From IMG/VR virus record IMGVR_UViG_3300037725_000018, positions 62,001-126,000 of that record: a stretch of 64,000 nucleotides of DNA; one strand, written 5' to 3'. Each line of letters starts with the position of its first letter. The first letter of the stretch is position 1. Under the pieces are notes generated by a model that had not been told where the DNA came from, did no database searches, and saw only the letters and a program-made list of their open reading frames with translations. Positions 28,019 to 63,743 of the stretch are shown piece after piece. Made by a program: the position numbers and the translations under genes.

Positions 28019-28023
28019 AAAAC

Positions 28024-28139
28024 AGGCTACACAAGAAAAGTGTGCTACCATTACACCATACGGGTTAAACCCGCACTTGGATTCGAACCAAGACCTTCTG
28101 CTTATAGGCAGATAAAAGTATGTCTGCTGCAGGTAGCCC
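28024..28139 (-). ncRNA. ACAGCA-motif RNA 3 (circularly permuted tRNA-like domain)
   Basis: Stem GGGCTAC/GTAGCCT, CTGCAGCAG, anticodon-like hairpin, T-arm, acceptor TGCGGG/CCCGTA closed by TTTAA, D-arm GTGTAATGGTAGCAC. Confidence 0.8.
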
Positions 28140-28200
28140 TATGTTTATCGTACGTCTATATATAGACTTTAGAAGCACTTGGTTCCGTAAGTCTATATAT

Positions 28201-29641: not shown

Positions 29642-29708
29642 ATAAGTCAAGGGTGACTCTACCAAAGTCCATTTAATCGGCAACTTACCGACCCTTGAAA
29701 AATAAAAC

Positions 29709-29829
29709 AGACTGCAATTGATTTAGTGCTCTGCCAGTTGAGCTACCCGTCCAAAAGCGGACGGGGTAGGACTCGAACCTACAACCTCTCCTTCCATGTA
29801 GGATATCAATGGATTGCTGTATGCAGCCT
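29709..29829 (-). ncRNA. ACAGCA-motif RNA 4 (circularly permuted tRNA-like domain)
   Basis: Stem AGGCTGCA/TGCAGTCT, TACAGCAA, T-arm GTAGG-TTCGAGT-CCTAC, acceptor CCCGTCC/GGACGGG closed by GCTTTT, then TA-GCTC-AACTGGCA-GAGC D-arm. Confidence 0.85.
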
Positions 29830-33277: not shown

Positions 33278-33286
33278 ATAAATGAC

Positions 33287-33574
33287 CGATTTTTTTCGTT
33301 TGGCGGCTCAACAAATTTAAATGGCGCTAGACGCCAGCATAATTCATTGTCCACATACTGTACAAATCATGAAAATTAATGAACAAACAATCACAAGATA
33401 CTCTTTACGGAAGTAAATCACTCTTCCGGTTGAGCCGCCAAACGAAAAAAACCGATCAAGATTCCCTCTGGTTGGTGGCTCAACATATGCCATAGCATGA
33501 ACACCAATTCACAATACTAATAAATTTACGGAAGTAAATCACTCTTCCGGTTGAGCCACCAACCGGAGGGAACC
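33287..33574 (-). ncRNA. Two tandem long-stem RNAs (33287-33454 and 33460-33574) with an identical 33-nt core
   Basis: Terminal inverted repeats of about 25 bp; shared TTTACGGAAGTAAATCACTCTTCCGGTTGAGCC at 33404-33436 and 33525-33557. Confidence 0.7.
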
Positions 33575-33633
33575 TATTCCCTCCTTTTTACTCACTTGGG
33601 TTTAACTTACGTCGTGCCCAAGTGTTTCAAAGA

Positions 33634-35166: not shown

Positions 35167-35288
35167 GTGTTTGCGGGATTCGAACCCGCGATTCCTTTTC
35201 AGGCTGGTTTCCCGGCACCGCTTTGTTTTGCTATACCGAACACCGTCATGTCCGGTTTGCCTTCTACGTAGAAAACAACTTTCACATT

Positions 35289-35546: not shown

Positions 35547-35620
35547 ATGTTTTTTTAACCCACCTTTTTACACGTAGAGAGTAAAAACCTGTTTCATGAA
35601 AAGCAATTAAACTCAATTTG

Positions 35621-35694
35621 CACGGCTGACGGGATTCGAACCCGCGACCTCTTCCGTGACAGGGAAGCATTCTAGACCACTGAACTACAGCCGT
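35621..35694 (-). tRNA. tRNA-Asp(GTC), second copy
   Basis: Loop CTGTCAC. Confidence 0.9.
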
Positions 35695-35702
35695 GTACTT
35701 AG

Positions 35703-35856
35703 GAGAATGTTGCATCCACCACCTTAGCGGGATTCGAACCCGCGACTACCGCAATCTAGCGCGGCACTCTGACCTACCTGAGTTATAAGGTGTCACCAAC
35801 GGCGGTGGGATTCGAACCCACAGATACCGATCAAGCACCGTTACAGCAACATTCTC
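35703..35856 (-). ncRNA. Double tRNA-like RNA enclosed in an 11-bp stem
   Basis: GAGAATGTTGC/GCAACATTCTC encloses an anticodon-less mini-tRNA and a cloverleaf (35719-35792) with a 6-nt loop. Confidence 0.7.
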
Positions 35857-36112
35857 TTATTATACATTGTCCTTGATTCCGGCCTACAAGGACTATAACA
35901 CACGCTTTATAAATCCGGACGTGTGGGTTCGGCTATAAACGCCTACGGGAAGTCACCGTGCTGGCGGTTTCCTGTCCCGCTCTTCTACAAAGGCCAGCAC
36001 CTTTGGAAGCAACCGTTCATAAGTATTAAAGAACGTCTTTCTCTCTTAACTTCACTACAGTAAACAACTCTGCTTGGAAGTTGTTTCGTGAAGGTCGCTT
36101 AAAGAAATTTTG

Positions 36113-36187: not shown

Positions 36188-36192
36188 ATGTA

Positions 36193-36296
36193 AGACATAA
36201 AGCATTAGGATTCGAACCCTGTTTTTTAAGGCTTCGGCACCACATTTTACGGATTCGAACCGCGCCGGGTGCGACCATACCAACCACTTTATGTCT
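36193..36296 (-). ncRNA. Structured RNA with two T-loops in a 10-bp closing stem
   Basis: AGACATAAAG/CTTTATGTCT; GGTTCGAATCC twice. Confidence 0.6.
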
Positions 36297-36380
36297 CAAC
36301 AAGTCATGTTGGTTTTTATATATAGGCTCTAACCGATAAAGTTTCAATCCGTTTGGTTATGAAATTTTTACCTGTATGTG

Positions 36381-36480: not shown

Positions 36481-36651
36481 TTGACAAGCGGTGTGCTTTT
36501 ACGCCAAATCGCGAGAGTATTAATCACAGGACGCCTTACCAGTTACGGGGTGCGCTCTCACTTCGTTGACAGCCATCTATTTTCACATACGCGGTCAACG
36601 GCGAACTCTTTAAAGGATGGATGCTTCTAATCCCACCTTCCGCTTTGTCAA
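36481..36651 (-). ncRNA. 23S rRNA H43/H44 (L11-binding domain) mimic RNA
   Basis: GGTGGGA-TTAGAAGCA-TCCATCC-TTTAAAGAGT...GCGTAAAAGC-ACAC closed by TTGACAA..GCGG/CCGC-TTGTCAA. Confidence 0.75.
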
Positions 36652-40336: not shown

Positions 40337-41812
40337 TTACACGCGAACCATGTCGTAACGATCATCCATGATCGTATTCAACGTAATTTGAATCGGGGTA
40401 ATGTTTTGGCCGGAAAGAATGTTCTTCATAATTGACGGGCTAAATCCGCTCACAAGAGCAGCTCCGCTTTCGGAAAACCGAACCGGATTATTCCCGCTAT
40501 CATCTAGGTTCCAAAACACAATGTTTGGGGCTTCGTATCCAGCTTTTTCGTACTTCTCCCGGACCATGTTCATCGCAGACACCGAACGCCCATCAATATT
40601 GTATGAATCAAACTGCATGTCGGACATAACAAGAATTGTTTCCGGCATTTGGTTTTCGGGTACGTTTCTGCTTTTTGCAAAGGAAAGCAAGCTTTCAAAC
40701 ATCGCAGAAATGTTTGTATTCATTCCCCAAGAAATTTCGTTTAGGCTTTCTACCCGATCTCGGAGATTTGAGCCTCCGATTTCAACGAAACTTGGGTTTT
40801 CGCTAAACGTCACAACCCGGTTTTGAAATGGTCCGGTGTTGTGCTCTGCCGTGTAAAGTCCAAGCCCGATAGCAACGTCAATCGGCCTTGTGGACGAGTT
40901 AGAGTTATAGGAAGCAGTCATGCTTCCGGACACGTCAACAACGGATAGAACATTATCTTCCATCCACACAGGAAGGTTCTTCCACTGCCCTTCAAGTTGC
41001 TTTAGCTCTTTGTCTCCGATAGAAGAGCCGCTTCCAAAAGCATTTCGGGATTGAAGAATGGGCTTGACAATTTCATGTGGAAAAATCGCCCCCGCACTCA
41101 TTTTTGTGTCTGTAGATTCGTCAAGCACGTCGTCTAGGTAAGCTTCAAAACGATCTTCGTCGTTTCGAACAAATGCATTCCGATACTTCCGGATTGCTTG
41201 AGATGGAACAGACTCGTAATCAATGCTATCCCAATTTTCTTCGCACATGTCCTGTTCAACTACGTCACGAAGACCGGACACAAGCTTTCTGTACCGCTTA
41301 GAGCGGTTTCCTACACTTCCACTATCAAACATGTGGTCACGGAGATCCGTAAACATGTCGTGGTCGGACTTGCCTTCAGACGGTGCCCACTTCGCCGCAA
41401 GACTGTCTCCGGACTCCAAGGCTTTTTCATAAAAATTCAAAGCGTCTTCATACACTTCGGTTCCCTTCGTTGAGTGAAGAACATCGTCCCAACGCCCGTA
41501 TTCGGGAATTAGATCAAGGTTTTTTCGGGCCGTTTCTGGATCGTTCTCTGCAAGCCACCGGAACATAATCCGAAACGTTCGCCGCTCTCCTTGTCCCCCG
41601 CGAATGTCGCGGTTATAGAAAAGTGACCGAAGAGCACCTTCCTTCGTTTCTTGATACGCCTTTCGAAAAAGGTCTTCGATGTATTCCGGGTCTTTTGAGC
41701 GAGACGCGCCCATAGAGAAGAAAAGATCCACAAGGTCTTTGCCGCTTGTGGAATGGGTCTTCATCCCATTTTCGGTCGTCTCGTCGTAAATTCCGGTTAG
41801 AATCTTGTTCAT
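40337..41812 (-). CDS. DUF2828-family helical plus vWA protein (Ro60/TROVE-like architecture)
   Basis: TTENGM, RDIRGGQGER, YGRWDD, AKWAP, MIDAS DVSGSM, WGMNTN, SDMQFD, VFWNL, VSGFSP. Confidence 0.9.
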   Translation of the reverse strand: MNKILTGIYDETTENGMKTHSTSGKDLVDLFFSMGASRSKDPEYIEDLFRKAYQETKEGALRSLFYNRDIRGGQGERRTFRIMFRWLAENDPETARKNLDLIPEYGRWDDVLHSTKGTEVYEDALNFYEKALESGDSLAAKWAPSEGKSDHDMFTDLRDHMFDSGSVGNRSKRYRKLVSGLRDVVEQDMCEENWDSIDYESVPSQAIRKYRNAFVRNDEDRFEAYLDDVLDESTDTKMSAGAIFPHEIVKPILQSRNAFGSGSSIGDKELKQLEGQWKNLPVWMEDNVLSVVDVSGSMTASYNSNSSTRPIDVAIGLGLYTAEHNTGPFQNRVVTFSENPSFVEIGGSNLRDRVESLNEISWGMNTNISAMFESLLSFAKSRNVPENQMPETILVMSDMQFDSYNIDGRSVSAMNMVREKYEKAGYEAPNIVFWNLDDSGNNPVRFSESGAALVSGFSPSIMKNILSGQNITPIQITLNTIMDDRYDMVRV

Positions 41813-63280: not shown

Positions 63281-63329
63281 AGAATATAGACATTAATATT
63301 TGAATTGAAAACAGATAAAAATTTTATAG

Positions 63330-63743
63330 TGGACCCGGCGGGATTCGAACCCGCGTCCGCAGCACCTTTGCAACATCGGTTGTCACAGTCTTAGAATGGT
63401 CTTTATTTTTGACCGACAGACTATTGTATTAGACCACACAAAAGTTTGTGGGTTTTATTTCAACCCGCTATCGGACTTGTTTTACGTTCTGCCTACCAAG
63501 CAAAACAAGTTGAAGCCCAGTAGGAATATCCGATGGTGTGTGCCTTACTCTCTATCGGAGTCGAGAAGTAAGGCTGCAGTTACGCCGCAAGAGAAGCGCC
63601 GAAGTGCTCCTCCATGTTGACGCCTGCAGGAACGCGGTTAACGTTGCCAAGTATTGATTCCGTCAGTTATTTTATGCCCACCTAACGGTAAGGGCAGACT
63701 GCCGACCTTGCTCCGCGTGCTACGTCGAAGCCGTGTCAGGCCC
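63330..63743 (-). ncRNA. ssrA: tmRNA
   Basis: 5' GGGCCTGACACGGCTTCGAC, 3' GGACGCGGGTTCGAATCCCGCCGGGTCCA, G3:U70; tag frame 63648-63580 GNVNRVPAGVNMEEHFGASLAA*. Confidence 0.92.

What the first reader, a model, noticed from the sequence alone, without database searches (positions are those of the whole stretch)
35703..35856. Two tRNA-like domains clamped inside one 11-bp stem
Seen: GAGAAUGUUGC/GCAACAUUCUC encloses (a) a mini-tRNA AACGGUG..GUGGG-UUCGAAU-CCCAC-CGCCGUU lacking the anticodon arm, and (b) a full cloverleaf whose anticodon loop is only 6 nt (CUAGAU). The 5' strand contains UUGCUGUA, the exact complement of the UACAGCAA motif of the Y-like RNAs; at 8 nt this could be chance. Inference: a bivalent non-decoding tRNA decoy, possibly interacting with the ACAGCA family.
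Basis: partly seen in the sequence, partly recalled or inferred. Interest (0 to 1): 0.7.

Follow-up and report, generated by a model that had tools for sequence, protein, structure and literature searches.

The report
Clamped double tRNA mimic in phage
A large uncultured phage from tidal-flat sediment carries a 154-nt gene for an RNA in which one 11-bp stem holds a shortened tRNA-like hairpin and a complete tRNA shape that cannot read codons; natural variants keep this fold through paired mutations, so it is a real structured RNA, probably a tRNA look-alike that binds proteins rather than decodes.

Summary
On the minus strand of 35703-35856, an 11-bp perfect stem encloses an acceptor/T-arm minihelix and a full cloverleaf. 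The cloverleaf scores 50 bits as Rfam tRNA and has a 6-nt anticodon loop.

The window is part of a 223-kb phage record with 40 tRNAs and a tmRNA. None of the ordinary tRNAs has such a clamp.

Three natural alleles were recovered. Between them the clamp changes at three base pairs, always on both sides. One acceptor pair and one T-stem pair also covary, and the anticodon arm is rebuilt with a 5-nt loop. The D arm, T loops and junction strands stay constant. Alleles B and C differ at about 11% of element positions but about 0.2% in 1 kb of flanks.

The UUGCUGUA motif is not conserved, so pairing with the ACAGCA (YrlA-like) RNAs is not supported.

Three context findings bear on function:
- A DUF2828 protein 4.5 kb upstream folds like Ro60.
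- A YrlA-like RNA lies in the same array.
- A second clamped two-T-loop RNA (36192-36297) also covaries.

Best reading: a stable, non-decoding tRNA-mimic RNA that acts as a decoy or tether. Expression, processing and partners are untested.

The parts
35846..35856 (-). 5' strand of the 11-bp clamp (RNA positions 1-11, GAGAAUGUUGC)
   Evidence: Sequence. Three of the 11 pairs change on both sides in allele C (6/149, 10/145, 11/144).
35843..35845 (-). Junction strand UGU between the clamp and the minihelix
   Evidence: Invariant in alleles A, B and C. The brine-run contig shows no difference over 35830-35856.
35798..35842 (-). Mini-tRNA: a 7-bp acceptor-like stem (AACGGUG/CGCCGUU), a 13-14-nt connector holding a conserved GG, and a T arm (GUGGG-UUCGAAU-CCCAC)
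   Evidence: folds as such on its own, though z is only -0.65. In the brine variant the T stem reads GCAGG/CCUG, which is two compensated pairs. Acceptor pair 20/54 goes from U.G to U.U in alleles B and C. An alternative 3-bp pairing, GGU/GCC to GGA/UCC, fits those alleles.
35793..35797 (-). Linker GGUGA between the two modules (GAUGA in allele C)
35719..35792 (-). Full cloverleaf tRNA mimic: acceptor CACCUUA/UAAGGUG, D arm, 5-bp anticodon stem with a 6-nt loop CUAGAU, 5-nt variable loop, T arm, discriminator G
   Evidence: ARAGORN tRNA-???. Rfam tRNA scores 50.2 bits and 50.5 bits for allele C. Acceptor pair 71/131 goes A-U to G-C. T-stem pair 114/130 goes G-C to G.U to A-U. The anticodon arm is rebuilt as UCCGG-UUAUU-CCGGG in allele C.
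35714..35718 (-). Junction strand UGGAU between the cloverleaf's discriminator G (35719) and the clamp
   Evidence: Invariant in the three alleles.
35703..35713 (-). 3' strand of the clamp (GCAACAUUCUC). tRNA-Asp starts 8 nt downstream, at 35694.
36192..36297 (-). E2, a second clamped RNA: stem GAGACAUAAAG/CUUUAUGUCUU encloses two UUCGAAU T-loop modules, directly 5' of tRNA-Glu(CUC)
   Evidence: In the L137/L138 lineage the clamp changes A-U to G-C, G-C to A-U and G.U to A-U, and stays fully paired.
40337..41812 (-). Ro60-like protein (Pfam DUF2828 + DUF7788/VWA), 4.5 kb upstream on the same strand. Context only; a possible partner.
   Evidence: Pfam. AF2 model with pLDDT 87.7. The top 13 Foldseek PDB hits are all full-length Ro60/Rsr or TROVE-domain entries, among them 2nvo (E 3e-9) and Thermus phage phiLo Ro60.
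29699..29822 (-). YrlA-like Y RNA holding the UACAGCAA motif in its 5' strand. Context only.
   Evidence: Rfam YrlA full-length match, 40.5 bits, E 5e-8, below the gathering score of 69. Conserved in L136 at 41.7 bits.

Best explanation
The element is a gene for a stable, non-decoding tRNA-mimic RNA of a jumbo-type phage.

Architecture. It folds into a three-way junction. An 11-bp terminal helix formed by the 5' and 3' ends holds two modules side by side. One is an acceptor/T-arm minihelix, a tRNA 'top half' whose 13-14-nt connector keeps a GG like a D loop. The other is a complete L-shaped tRNA body whose anticodon loop is too short (5-6 nt) and too variable to read codons.

Most likely mechanism (inferred).
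- The RNA is made as part of the tRNA array.
- Its 3' end is set by RNase P cutting at tRNA-Asp 8 nt downstream.
- The clamp seals both ends. This protects the RNA and keeps the acceptor ends of both modules from being trimmed, CCA-tailed and charged.
- The two tRNA-shaped modules then occupy a protein that recognises the tRNA elbow/acceptor. They act either as a decoy for a host tRNA-directed enzyme or defence nuclease, or as a Y-RNA-like tether working with the phage's own Ro60-like protein.

Shown: the sequence, the fold's conservation by compensatory change, the lack of a conserved anticodon loop, the fast cassette-like divergence, and the Ro60-like and YrlA-like context.

Inferred: expression, end formation, absence of charging, and the protein partner.
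For: Fold under selection.
- Alleles A and C differ by about 16%, yet 98.8% of 82 pair cells stay paired, with 5 double-sided changes (3 in the clamp). Slid controls give none.
- Random substitution would break about 9 pairs.
- Allele B supplies a G.U intermediate for pair 114/130 and a G.U to A-U change at 97/104.
- The brine variant compensates two pairs of T stem 1.

Non-decoding.
- The anticodon loops are CUAGAU, CUUGAU and UUAUU.
- The D arm, both T loops and the junction strands are invariant or nearly so.

The clamp is specific to this element. No ordinary tRNA of the phage has a leader/trailer complement longer than 7 nt. A second clamped two-T-loop RNA, E2, also covaries.

The element is a discrete, fast-changing unit. 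Alleles B and C differ by 12 mismatches plus 5 gap columns inside it, against 2 mismatches and 4 gap columns in 983 nt of flanks.

Context.
- The region encodes a Ro60-like fold, a YrlA-like RNA, a CCA-adding enzyme and an RNA ligase, and a weak 2H-phosphoesterase match and a CYTH protein.
- Phage Ro60 is known to bind several Y-RNA-like RNAs defined by a 5'-3' stem and CGAA motifs (PMC12135203).
- YrlA RNAs are established tRNA mimics (PMC4201824).

No ORF of 60 aa or more overlaps the element on either strand.
Against: - There is no expression or end-mapping data. No RNA run was listed.
- Both modules have 7-bp acceptor stems of normal geometry and could be RNase P substrates. M. smegmatis YrlA with a 7-bp stem is one (bioRxiv 10.1101/312249). 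The clamp may therefore exist only in a precursor.
- The clamp is a perfect helix whose sequence changes between alleles. Ro60-binding strands of Y RNAs, by contrast, are sequence-conserved.
- The Rfam YrlA model does not match the element even at E up to 10.
- More distant phages with the Ro60-like gene have a YrlA-like RNA but no copy of this element within 10 kb.
- Only three full alleles and one partial allele are known, all from one lineage.
Confidence: 0.45

Rival explanations
1. Dimeric precursor. The 154-nt unit is only a processing intermediate. RNase P cuts 5' of both modules and 3' trimming plus the phage CCA-adding enzyme release two small RNAs: a 45-nt minihelix and a 74-nt tRNA-like RNA. 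These two are the active species. The clamp pairs leader with trailer to order or delay processing.
For: - Both acceptor stems are 7 bp, stack directly on 5-bp T stems, and have a G discriminator.
- U lies at -1 of the minihelix.
- The phage's genuine tRNAs also lack encoded CCA, and the phage has its own CCA-adding enzyme.
- Dimeric tRNA precursors are classical in T4. I could not check this here; it rests on established knowledge.
- M. smegmatis YrlA is cut by RNase P and then CCA-tailed (bioRxiv 10.1101/312249).
Against: - Leader and trailer sequences of ordinary precursors are not kept paired by compensatory change. Here 3 of 11 clamp pairs covary and both junction strands are invariant.
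- No other tRNA of the array has such a stem.
- An 11-bp duplex only 3-6 nt from both cleavage sites should hinder RNase P and 3' exonucleases. This is inference.
Confidence: 0.27
2. Y RNA proper. The clamp is the binding site of the phage Ro60-like protein, and the two tRNA-like modules are the effector-binding end. On this reading the element is a new Y RNA subtype that tethers Ro60 to a tRNA-binding enzyme. This is a special case of the best explanation.
For: - A Ro60-like fold is encoded 4.5 kb upstream on the same strand.
- YrlA-like RNAs lie in the same array and next to a 51%-identical Ro60-like gene in L127.
- Bacteria and phages usually have several Y RNAs per Ro60 (PMC4201824, PMC12135203).
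- The element has the generic Y-RNA layout: a terminal 5'/3' stem plus a tRNA-like module with CGAA loops.
Against: - The clamp has no bulge, and its upper 3 bp are swapped in allele C. Ro60 contacts a conserved 5' strand (bioRxiv 10.1101/312249).
- There is no YrlA model hit.
- The modules are in normal tRNA order, not the permuted YrlA order.
- The element is absent from the distant Ro60-like loci.
Confidence: 0.18
3. Decaying tRNA genes. Two tRNA pseudogenes, one with an internal deletion and one with a 1-nt loop deletion, happen to be flanked by an inverted repeat. The unit has no function.
For: - Phage tRNA arrays hold remnants. Orphan T arms occur at 35177, 27506 and elsewhere.
- An 11-bp inverted repeat alone is within chance for 64 kb.
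- The element diverges faster than its flanks.
Against: - The divergence is compensated: 5 double-sided changes, 98.8% of cells paired and about 9 breaks expected.
- The tertiary-core nucleotides and both T loops are kept.
- Allele C still scores 50.5 bits as tRNA.
Confidence: 0.07
4. One reading: the clamp's 5' strand (UUGCUGUA) opens and base-pairs with the UACAGCAA motif of the YrlA-like RNAs, so the element acts as an anti-Y sponge.
For: The exact 8-nt complement exists. TACAGCAA occurs 4 times in the window against 1.1 expected. The motif lies in the predicted Ro60-binding 5' strand of the YrlA-like RNA.
Against: - Allele C reads UUAUUGUA, with both changes compensated within the clamp.
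- The YrlA-like RNA of the L136 lineage, which is 99.6-99.9% identical to the allele B/C contigs over shared sequence, keeps UACAGCAA.
- 3 of 100 shuffles reach 4 matches.
- The 8-mer is buried in a stable helix.
Confidence: 0.03

Closest known systems
YrlA-type bacterial and phage Y RNAs (Rfam RF02553; Chen et al. 2014, PMC4201824)
   Same: Non-decoding tRNA mimics with a terminal stem made by the 5' and 3' ends. They keep the D-loop/T-loop core and are encoded on the same strand near a Ro60 gene, in phages inside tRNA regions. This phage has one, at 29699-29822.
   Different: YrlA has one tRNA-like module in circularly permuted order (closed acceptor, open anticodon stem) and a bulged stem with a conserved 5' strand. 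The element here has two modules in normal order, open acceptor stems at a three-way junction, and a perfect, sequence-variable clamp. The YrlA model gives no match.
Yrl1/Yrl2 of Thermus phage phiLo bound by phage Ro60 (PMC12135203)
   Same: Phage-encoded RNAs near a phage Ro60, recognised by a 5'-3' stem flanking a region with CGAA motifs. There are several per phage.
   Different: Those RNAs have a stem-bulge-stem layout without full tRNA cloverleaves, and their binding to Ro60 was shown experimentally. Here binding is untested.
T4 stable RNA species 1 (rnaC), and species 2 (rnaD), in the T4 tRNA cluster
   Same: Small stable non-tRNA RNAs encoded within a phage tRNA cluster. rnaC has a tRNA-type T arm (CCGGG-UUCGAAU-CCCGG) and paired ends. 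Their function is still unknown.
   Different: rnaC has a single T arm plus long unrelated hairpins. It has no second module, no complete cloverleaf and no sequence similarity.
Ordinary tRNA (RF00005) and tRNA pseudogenes
   Same: Module 2 scores 50 bits and has every tertiary-core nucleotide.
   Different: Its anticodon loop is 5-6 nt with no conserved anticodon. It is enclosed with a minihelix in a covarying clamp, and its 3' end runs into the clamp.
Acceptor/T-arm minihelices and armless mitochondrial tRNAs
   Same: Module 1 equals the 12-bp coaxial 'top half' of tRNA. By established knowledge this is the minimal substrate of RNase P and CCA-adding enzymes.
   Different: Here it is a natural, genomically encoded unit fused to a second tRNA shape in a phage.

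Membership tests
tRNA (RF00005), module 2 | Cloverleaf scoring above the Rfam gathering score | tested here: met
   50.2 bits against 29. Allele C scores 50.5 bits.
tRNA (RF00005), module 2 | 7-nt anticodon loop with U33 and a purine at 37, and an anticodon kept among relatives | tested here: not met
   The loops are CUAGAU (6 nt), CUUGAU (6 nt) and UUAUU (5 nt). ARAGORN gives 2-nt 'anticodons' for alleles A and B. It reads allele C as Ile(tat), which by my reading of the sequence requires opening a G-C pair and puts U at position 37.
tRNA (RF00005), module 2 | Free 3' end that is CCA-tailed and aminoacylated | not testable with these tools
   No CCA is encoded and the 3' side continues into the clamp. 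No RNA data were available.
YrlA (RF02553) | Match to the covariance model | tested here: not met
   No YrlA hit on 35703-35856 at E up to 10. The same model finds 29699-29822 at 40.5 bits.
YrlA (RF02553) | Permuted tRNA topology (acceptor closed by a loop, ends at the anticodon stem) | tested here: not met
   Both modules are in the normal 5'-acceptor to T-arm to 3'-acceptor order.
Y RNA (generic) | Long stem formed by the 5' and 3' ends | tested here: met
   An 11-bp clamp with 3 covarying pairs.
Y RNA (generic) | Conserved, bulged Ro60-binding helix with a sequence-conserved 5' strand | tested here: not met
   The helix is perfect, and positions 6, 10 and 11 of the 5' strand change in allele C. 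Only GAGAA/UUCUC is constant, and over too little divergence to be informative.
Y RNA (generic) | Encoded near a Ro60 gene on the same strand | tested here: met
   The Ro60-like fold at 40337-41812(-) lies 4.5 kb upstream. Pfam TROVE itself finds nothing in the genome.
Y RNA (generic) | Physical binding to Ro60 | not testable with these tools
   Complex prediction does not fold protein-RNA jobs.
tRNA pseudogene | Neutral decay: substitutions break stems as often as chance predicts | tested here: not met
   One broken pair observed against about 8.7 expected, and 5 compensated pairs (P about 5e-6).
Phage tRNA-cluster stable RNA (T4 rnaC type) | Non-tRNA RNA with a T arm and paired ends inside a phage tRNA cluster | tested here: met
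   The location is shown and the T4 comparison. This is a loose descriptive class with no sequence homology.

The most novel reading that the evidence does not exclude
E1 and its neighbour E2 define a new class of phage RNA: 'clamped multi-T-loop tRNA mimics'. These would be three-way-junction RNAs that present two tRNA elbows at a fixed geometry. They sit in an island of translation-apparatus mimics together with YrlA-like RNAs, a copy of the 23S L11-binding domain and a tmRNA. They would act as anti-defence decoys for host tRNA-directed nucleases or sensors. Their cassette-like hypervariability within one phage population would be the trace of an arms race.
Probability: 0.2. Interest if true: 0.8.

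Novelty: new variant of a known kind. Interest (0 to 1): 0.6.

Why it matters
Phage tRNA arrays are now read mainly as supply lines against host tRNA-cleaving defences and codon mismatch. This element shows that such arrays also hold selected RNAs that look like tRNA but cannot decode.

If it binds a tRNA-recognising factor, it would be a natural bivalent tRNA mimic. That is a compact tool for probing or blocking RNase P, CCA-adding enzymes, tRNA-targeting toxins or Ro60 complexes.

The work also gives two context results. The widespread phage DUF2828 protein is Ro60-like by fold, and it co-occurs with YrlA-like RNAs. This extends the Ro60/Y-RNA system to many large phages: 711 phage records match the protein.

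The sharp local divergence between alleles, with the fold kept, marks the element as a candidate conflict locus that can be tested directly.

Tried and rejected
- Exact and near-exact DNA patterns in IMG/VR found no relative. The Ro60-like protein found no close locus there either.
- megablast and blastn against 50,697 phage records gave only a tRNA-Met piece of XacN1.
- The single metagenome scan used a pattern that was too loose (two T loops plus the D arm). It returned 120 ordinary tandem tRNAs and no homologue, so that scan was wasted.
- A single-sequence covariance model (R1) found only tandem tRNAs in 39 loci and no second copy in the phage genome.
- A custom search over 1 Mb for stems of 9 bp or more enclosing two T arms found only this element plus chance cases.
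- The second read-laying run on four low-share runs gave nothing.
- No RNA run was listed.
- Complex prediction (Ro60-like protein plus the RNA) was not folded, because the tool gives no result for RNA partners. This is not evidence either way.
- The sigma-70 scan found no promoter for the element. A perfect TATAAT 2 nt upstream is kept in alleles A to C, but the -35 is weak (3 of 6), so I make no promoter claim.
- A doublet-decoding or frameshift tRNA was considered and rejected, because loop length and sequence differ among alleles.
- AlaRS-type acceptor identity (G3:U70) is absent from both modules.
- No close paralogue exists among the phage's tRNAs. The best is 72% to tRNA-Asp, mostly in the T arm. 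The anticodon arm faintly resembles that of tRNA-Arg(ACG).

Full report
**What is there.** Read on the minus strand, 35856 to 35703 gives a 154-nt RNA. Its parts, in order, are:
- GAGAAUGUUGC, the 5' strand of the clamp;
- UGU;
- AACGGUG, then the 14-nt connector CUUGAUCGGUAUCU, then GUGGG-UUCGAAU-CCCAC, then CGCCGUU (the minihelix);
- GGUGA;
- a complete cloverleaf: CACCUUA, UA, ACUC-AGGUAGGUCA-GAGU, G, CCGCG-CUAGAU-UGCGG, UAGUC, GCGGG-UUCGAAU-CCCGC, UAAGGUG, G;
- UGGAU;
- GCAACAUUCUC, the 3' strand of the clamp.

ARAGORN reports the cloverleaf as tRNA-??? with a two-base anticodon. Rfam tRNA scores it 50.2 bits. The minihelix alone scores 16.4 bits. RNAfold keeps the clamp in the minimum-free-energy fold of all three alleles, and keeps the full cloverleaf in alleles B and C. 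The z-score for allele A is -4.35. No ORF of 60 aa or more overlaps the element.

**Where it sits.** The window is part of a 223-kb viral record from a tidal-flat metagenome. It holds 40 tRNA calls and a tmRNA, all on the minus strand. tRNA-Asp begins 8 nt after the element. The region also encodes a CCA-adding enzyme, an RNA ligase, a CYTH protein, a weak 2H-phosphoesterase match, and a DUF2828/DUF7788 protein at 40337-41812.

**Is it more than chance?** An 11-bp inverted repeat alone is not exceptional in 64 kb, and the 8-nt complement to UACAGCAA is weak evidence. The clamp is nevertheless specific. None of the ordinary tRNAs or the tmRNA has more than 7 nt of leader/trailer complementarity.

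The decisive evidence came from natural variants.
- Laying Logan contigs on the region showed two variant forms. I rebuilt them.
- I then found both on assembled JGI contigs through neighbouring genes. Allele B is L143:117-269. Allele C is L137:941-1092, and is identical in L138 and L142.
- Between A and C, about 16% of positions differ, yet 98.8% of pair cells remain standard pairs. Five pairs changed on both sides: 6/149 U-A to C-G, 10/145 G-C to A-U, 11/144 C-G to U-A, 71/131 A-U to G-C, and 114/130 G-C to A-U. Structures slid by one to three columns show none.
- Allele B supplies the G.U intermediate at 114/130 and turns G.U into A-U at 97/104.
- In allele C the whole anticodon arm is replaced by UCCGG-UUAUU-CCGGG.
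- A contig from a brine run shows T stem 1 as GCAGG/CCUG instead of GUGGG/CCCAC, which is two further compensated pairs.
- Random placement of 20 substitutions would break about 9 pairs, and gives five compensated pairs with P about 5e-6.

The only uncompensated change is U.G to U.U at 20/54 in the minihelix acceptor. An alternative three-pair helix (GGU/GCC in allele A, GGA/UCC in alleles B and C) would absorb it. The exact pairing of the minihelix's lower part therefore stays open.

**What is kept and what varies.** These parts are invariant:
- the D arm with A14, G15 and G18G19;
- C48 and G46 of the variable loop;
- the junction strands UGU and UGGAU;
- the GG of the minihelix connector.

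Both T loops change only G to A at the purine position 57. The clamp's upper pairs, the linker and the anticodon arm vary. The loops are 6, 6 and 5 nt long with unrelated sequences. ARAGORN reads allele C as Ile(tat); from the sequence, that reading requires opening a G-C pair and puts U at position 37. This is the pattern of an RNA selected for tRNA shape, not for decoding.

**A fast, discrete unit.** Alleles B and C lie in almost identical genomes. There are 2 mismatches and 4 gap columns in 983 nt of flanks. Inside the 153-nt element there are 12 mismatches and 5 gap columns. The reference lineage is about 8% diverged from these contigs overall, and the element is again the most diverged feature. 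Gene conversion or diversifying selection could both produce this, and I cannot separate them.

**A family of two.** The stretch 36192-36297(-) is a second RNA, E2. In it the stem GAGACAUAAAG/CUUUAUGUCUU encloses two UUCGAAU modules, directly 5' of tRNA-Glu. In L137 and L138 its clamp changes at three pairs, two of them on both sides, and stays fully paired. A search of 1 Mb of other phage tRNA regions, and of the phage's own genome, found no further member.

**Context: a Ro60/Y-RNA system.** Pfam TROVE finds nothing in the genome. However, the DUF2828 protein models confidently (pLDDT 87.7), and its 13 best PDB matches are all full-length Ro60/Rsr or TROVE-domain entries, including the Ro60 of Thermus phage phiLo. 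The Rfam YrlA model matches 29699-29822(-) over its full length at 40.5 bits, E 5e-8, which is below the gathering score. The UACAGCAA motif aligns to the 5' strand that is the predicted Ro60-binding side. A phage with a 51%-identical Ro60-like gene also has a YrlA-like match 4 kb away on the same strand.

**Does the element pair with them?** In allele C, UUGCUGUA is UUAUUGUA. Both changes are matched on the other strand of the clamp. The YrlA-like RNA in the related contig L136 keeps UACAGCAA. L136 is 99.6-99.9% identical to the allele B and C contigs where they overlap, although it does not itself cover the element. Selection thus acts on the internal helix, and I reject the pairing idea.

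**Mechanism.** The data show a selected, non-decoding, two-module tRNA mimic held by a terminal helix. I consider it most likely (0.45) that the clamped RNA is the working form. On this reading the helix protects the ends and keeps both acceptor ends from maturing. The two tRNA shapes engage a tRNA-recognising protein, as a decoy or as a tether.

A link to the Ro60-like protein is plausible from neighbourhood and general layout. It is weakened in three ways: the clamp has no bulge and its sequence varies, the YrlA model does not match, and the element is absent from more distant Ro60-like loci. I give it 0.18 as a special case.

The main rival (0.27) is a dimeric precursor cut by RNase P into a minihelix and a tRNA-like RNA. 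The normal 7-bp acceptor stems favour it. The covarying clamp, the invariant junction strands and the lack of clamps elsewhere in the array count against it.

Plain pseudogenes (0.07) are contradicted by the compensation.

**Comparison with known systems.** The element works like a Y-RNA-type tRNA mimic but fails the YrlA membership tests on model score, permuted topology and conserved 5' strand. It shares its genomic niche with T4 species 1 RNA, which has one T arm and paired ends, but has no homology to it. It is best filed as a new variant of the known kind 'phage-encoded tRNA-mimic RNA'.

**Limits.** The evidence rests on three full alleles and one partial allele from one lineage. There are no RNA data and no binding test. 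One costly metagenome scan was lost to a loose pattern.

Noticed in passing
window 36591-36640 (-): A 50-nt stretch matches the L11-binding GTPase-associated-centre region of 23S rRNA (GGUGGGAUUAGAAGCAUCCAUCCUUUAAAGAG). Rfam LSU_rRNA_bacteria scores it 27.6 bits, E 7.7e-6, and the archaeal model scores 24.1 bits. It lies in a non-coding gap of the tRNA array and may be a ribosomal-RNA mimic.
   Followed up: partly
window 36192-36297 (-): E2 is a second RNA with an 11-bp terminal clamp around two UUCGAAU T-loop modules, directly 5' of tRNA-Glu(CUC). The clamp covaries in L137 and L138 (A-U to G-C, G-C to A-U, G.U to A-U).
   Followed up: partly
window 29699-29822 (-); L136:8612-8737: A YrlA-like Y RNA with permuted tRNA topology and UACAGCAA in its 5' strand. 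It gives a full-length Rfam YrlA match at 40.5 bits, below the gathering score, and is conserved in a related contig at 41.7 bits.
   Followed up: yes
window about 28021-28140 (-): A second RNA with YrlA-like permuted topology, read by eye. Its parts are T arm CUUGG-UUCGAAU-CCAAG, closed acceptor UGCGGGU-UUA-ACCCGUA, D arm GGUG..GCAC, terminal helix GGCUAC/GUAGCC, and CUGCAGCAG in the 5' strand. The Rfam YrlA model does not detect it.
   Followed up: partly
window 40337-41812 (-): The DUF2828/DUF7788 protein is Ro60-like by predicted fold, although Pfam TROVE misses it. tblastn finds homologues in 711 phage records (Escherichia, Mycobacterium, Salmonella, Vibrio, Listeria, Staphylococcus and others), so a Ro60-type system may be common in large phages.
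   Followed up: partly
window 35167-35262 (-): An orphan T arm (CGCGGG-UUCGAAU-CCCGC) lies 6 nt 5' of tRNA-Thr. Upstream, ACGGUGUUCGGUAU resembles ACGGUGCUUGAUCGGUAU of the minihelix, which suggests a possible paralogous remnant.
   Followed up: no
window 33283-33458 and 33459-33575: Two adjacent very long inverted repeats: 30-nt arms at 93% and 26-nt arms at 92%. They share the GTTGAGCC.CCAA motif and sit next to tRNA-Leu(AAG). Their nature is unknown.
   Followed up: no
window 35866-36045 (-): About 190 nt just upstream of the element is almost identical between lineages that differ by about 8% elsewhere. It holds a hairpin (GUGCUGGC...GCCAGCAC) and ends in a conserved TATAAT 2 nt before the element. 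It could be another RNA or a regulatory region.
   Followed up: partly
L143:355-583 versus L137:1178-1249 and window 35547-35619: The spacer between tRNA-Asp and tRNA-Lys is 229 nt of unrelated sequence in the allele B contig, against about 72 nt in the others. L137 and L138 also carry an extra 66-aa ORF between tRNA-Lys and E2, and the allele B/C lineage carries a PDDEXK_5 nuclease gene after tRNA-Glu(UUC). The array is a mosaic of cassettes.
   Followed up: no
window 63329-63743 (-): A phage-encoded tmRNA (Rfam 91 bits) with tag peptide GNVNRVPAGVNMEEHFGASLAA.
   Followed up: no
L044, L080, L123, L115 (metagenome loci): Unrelated contigs carry a tRNA-like unit whose D arm (TAACTCAGTTCGGTTAGAGT) is followed by a short segment and a T arm without a normal anticodon arm. 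This is another possible truncated tRNA mimic in other phages.
   Followed up: no
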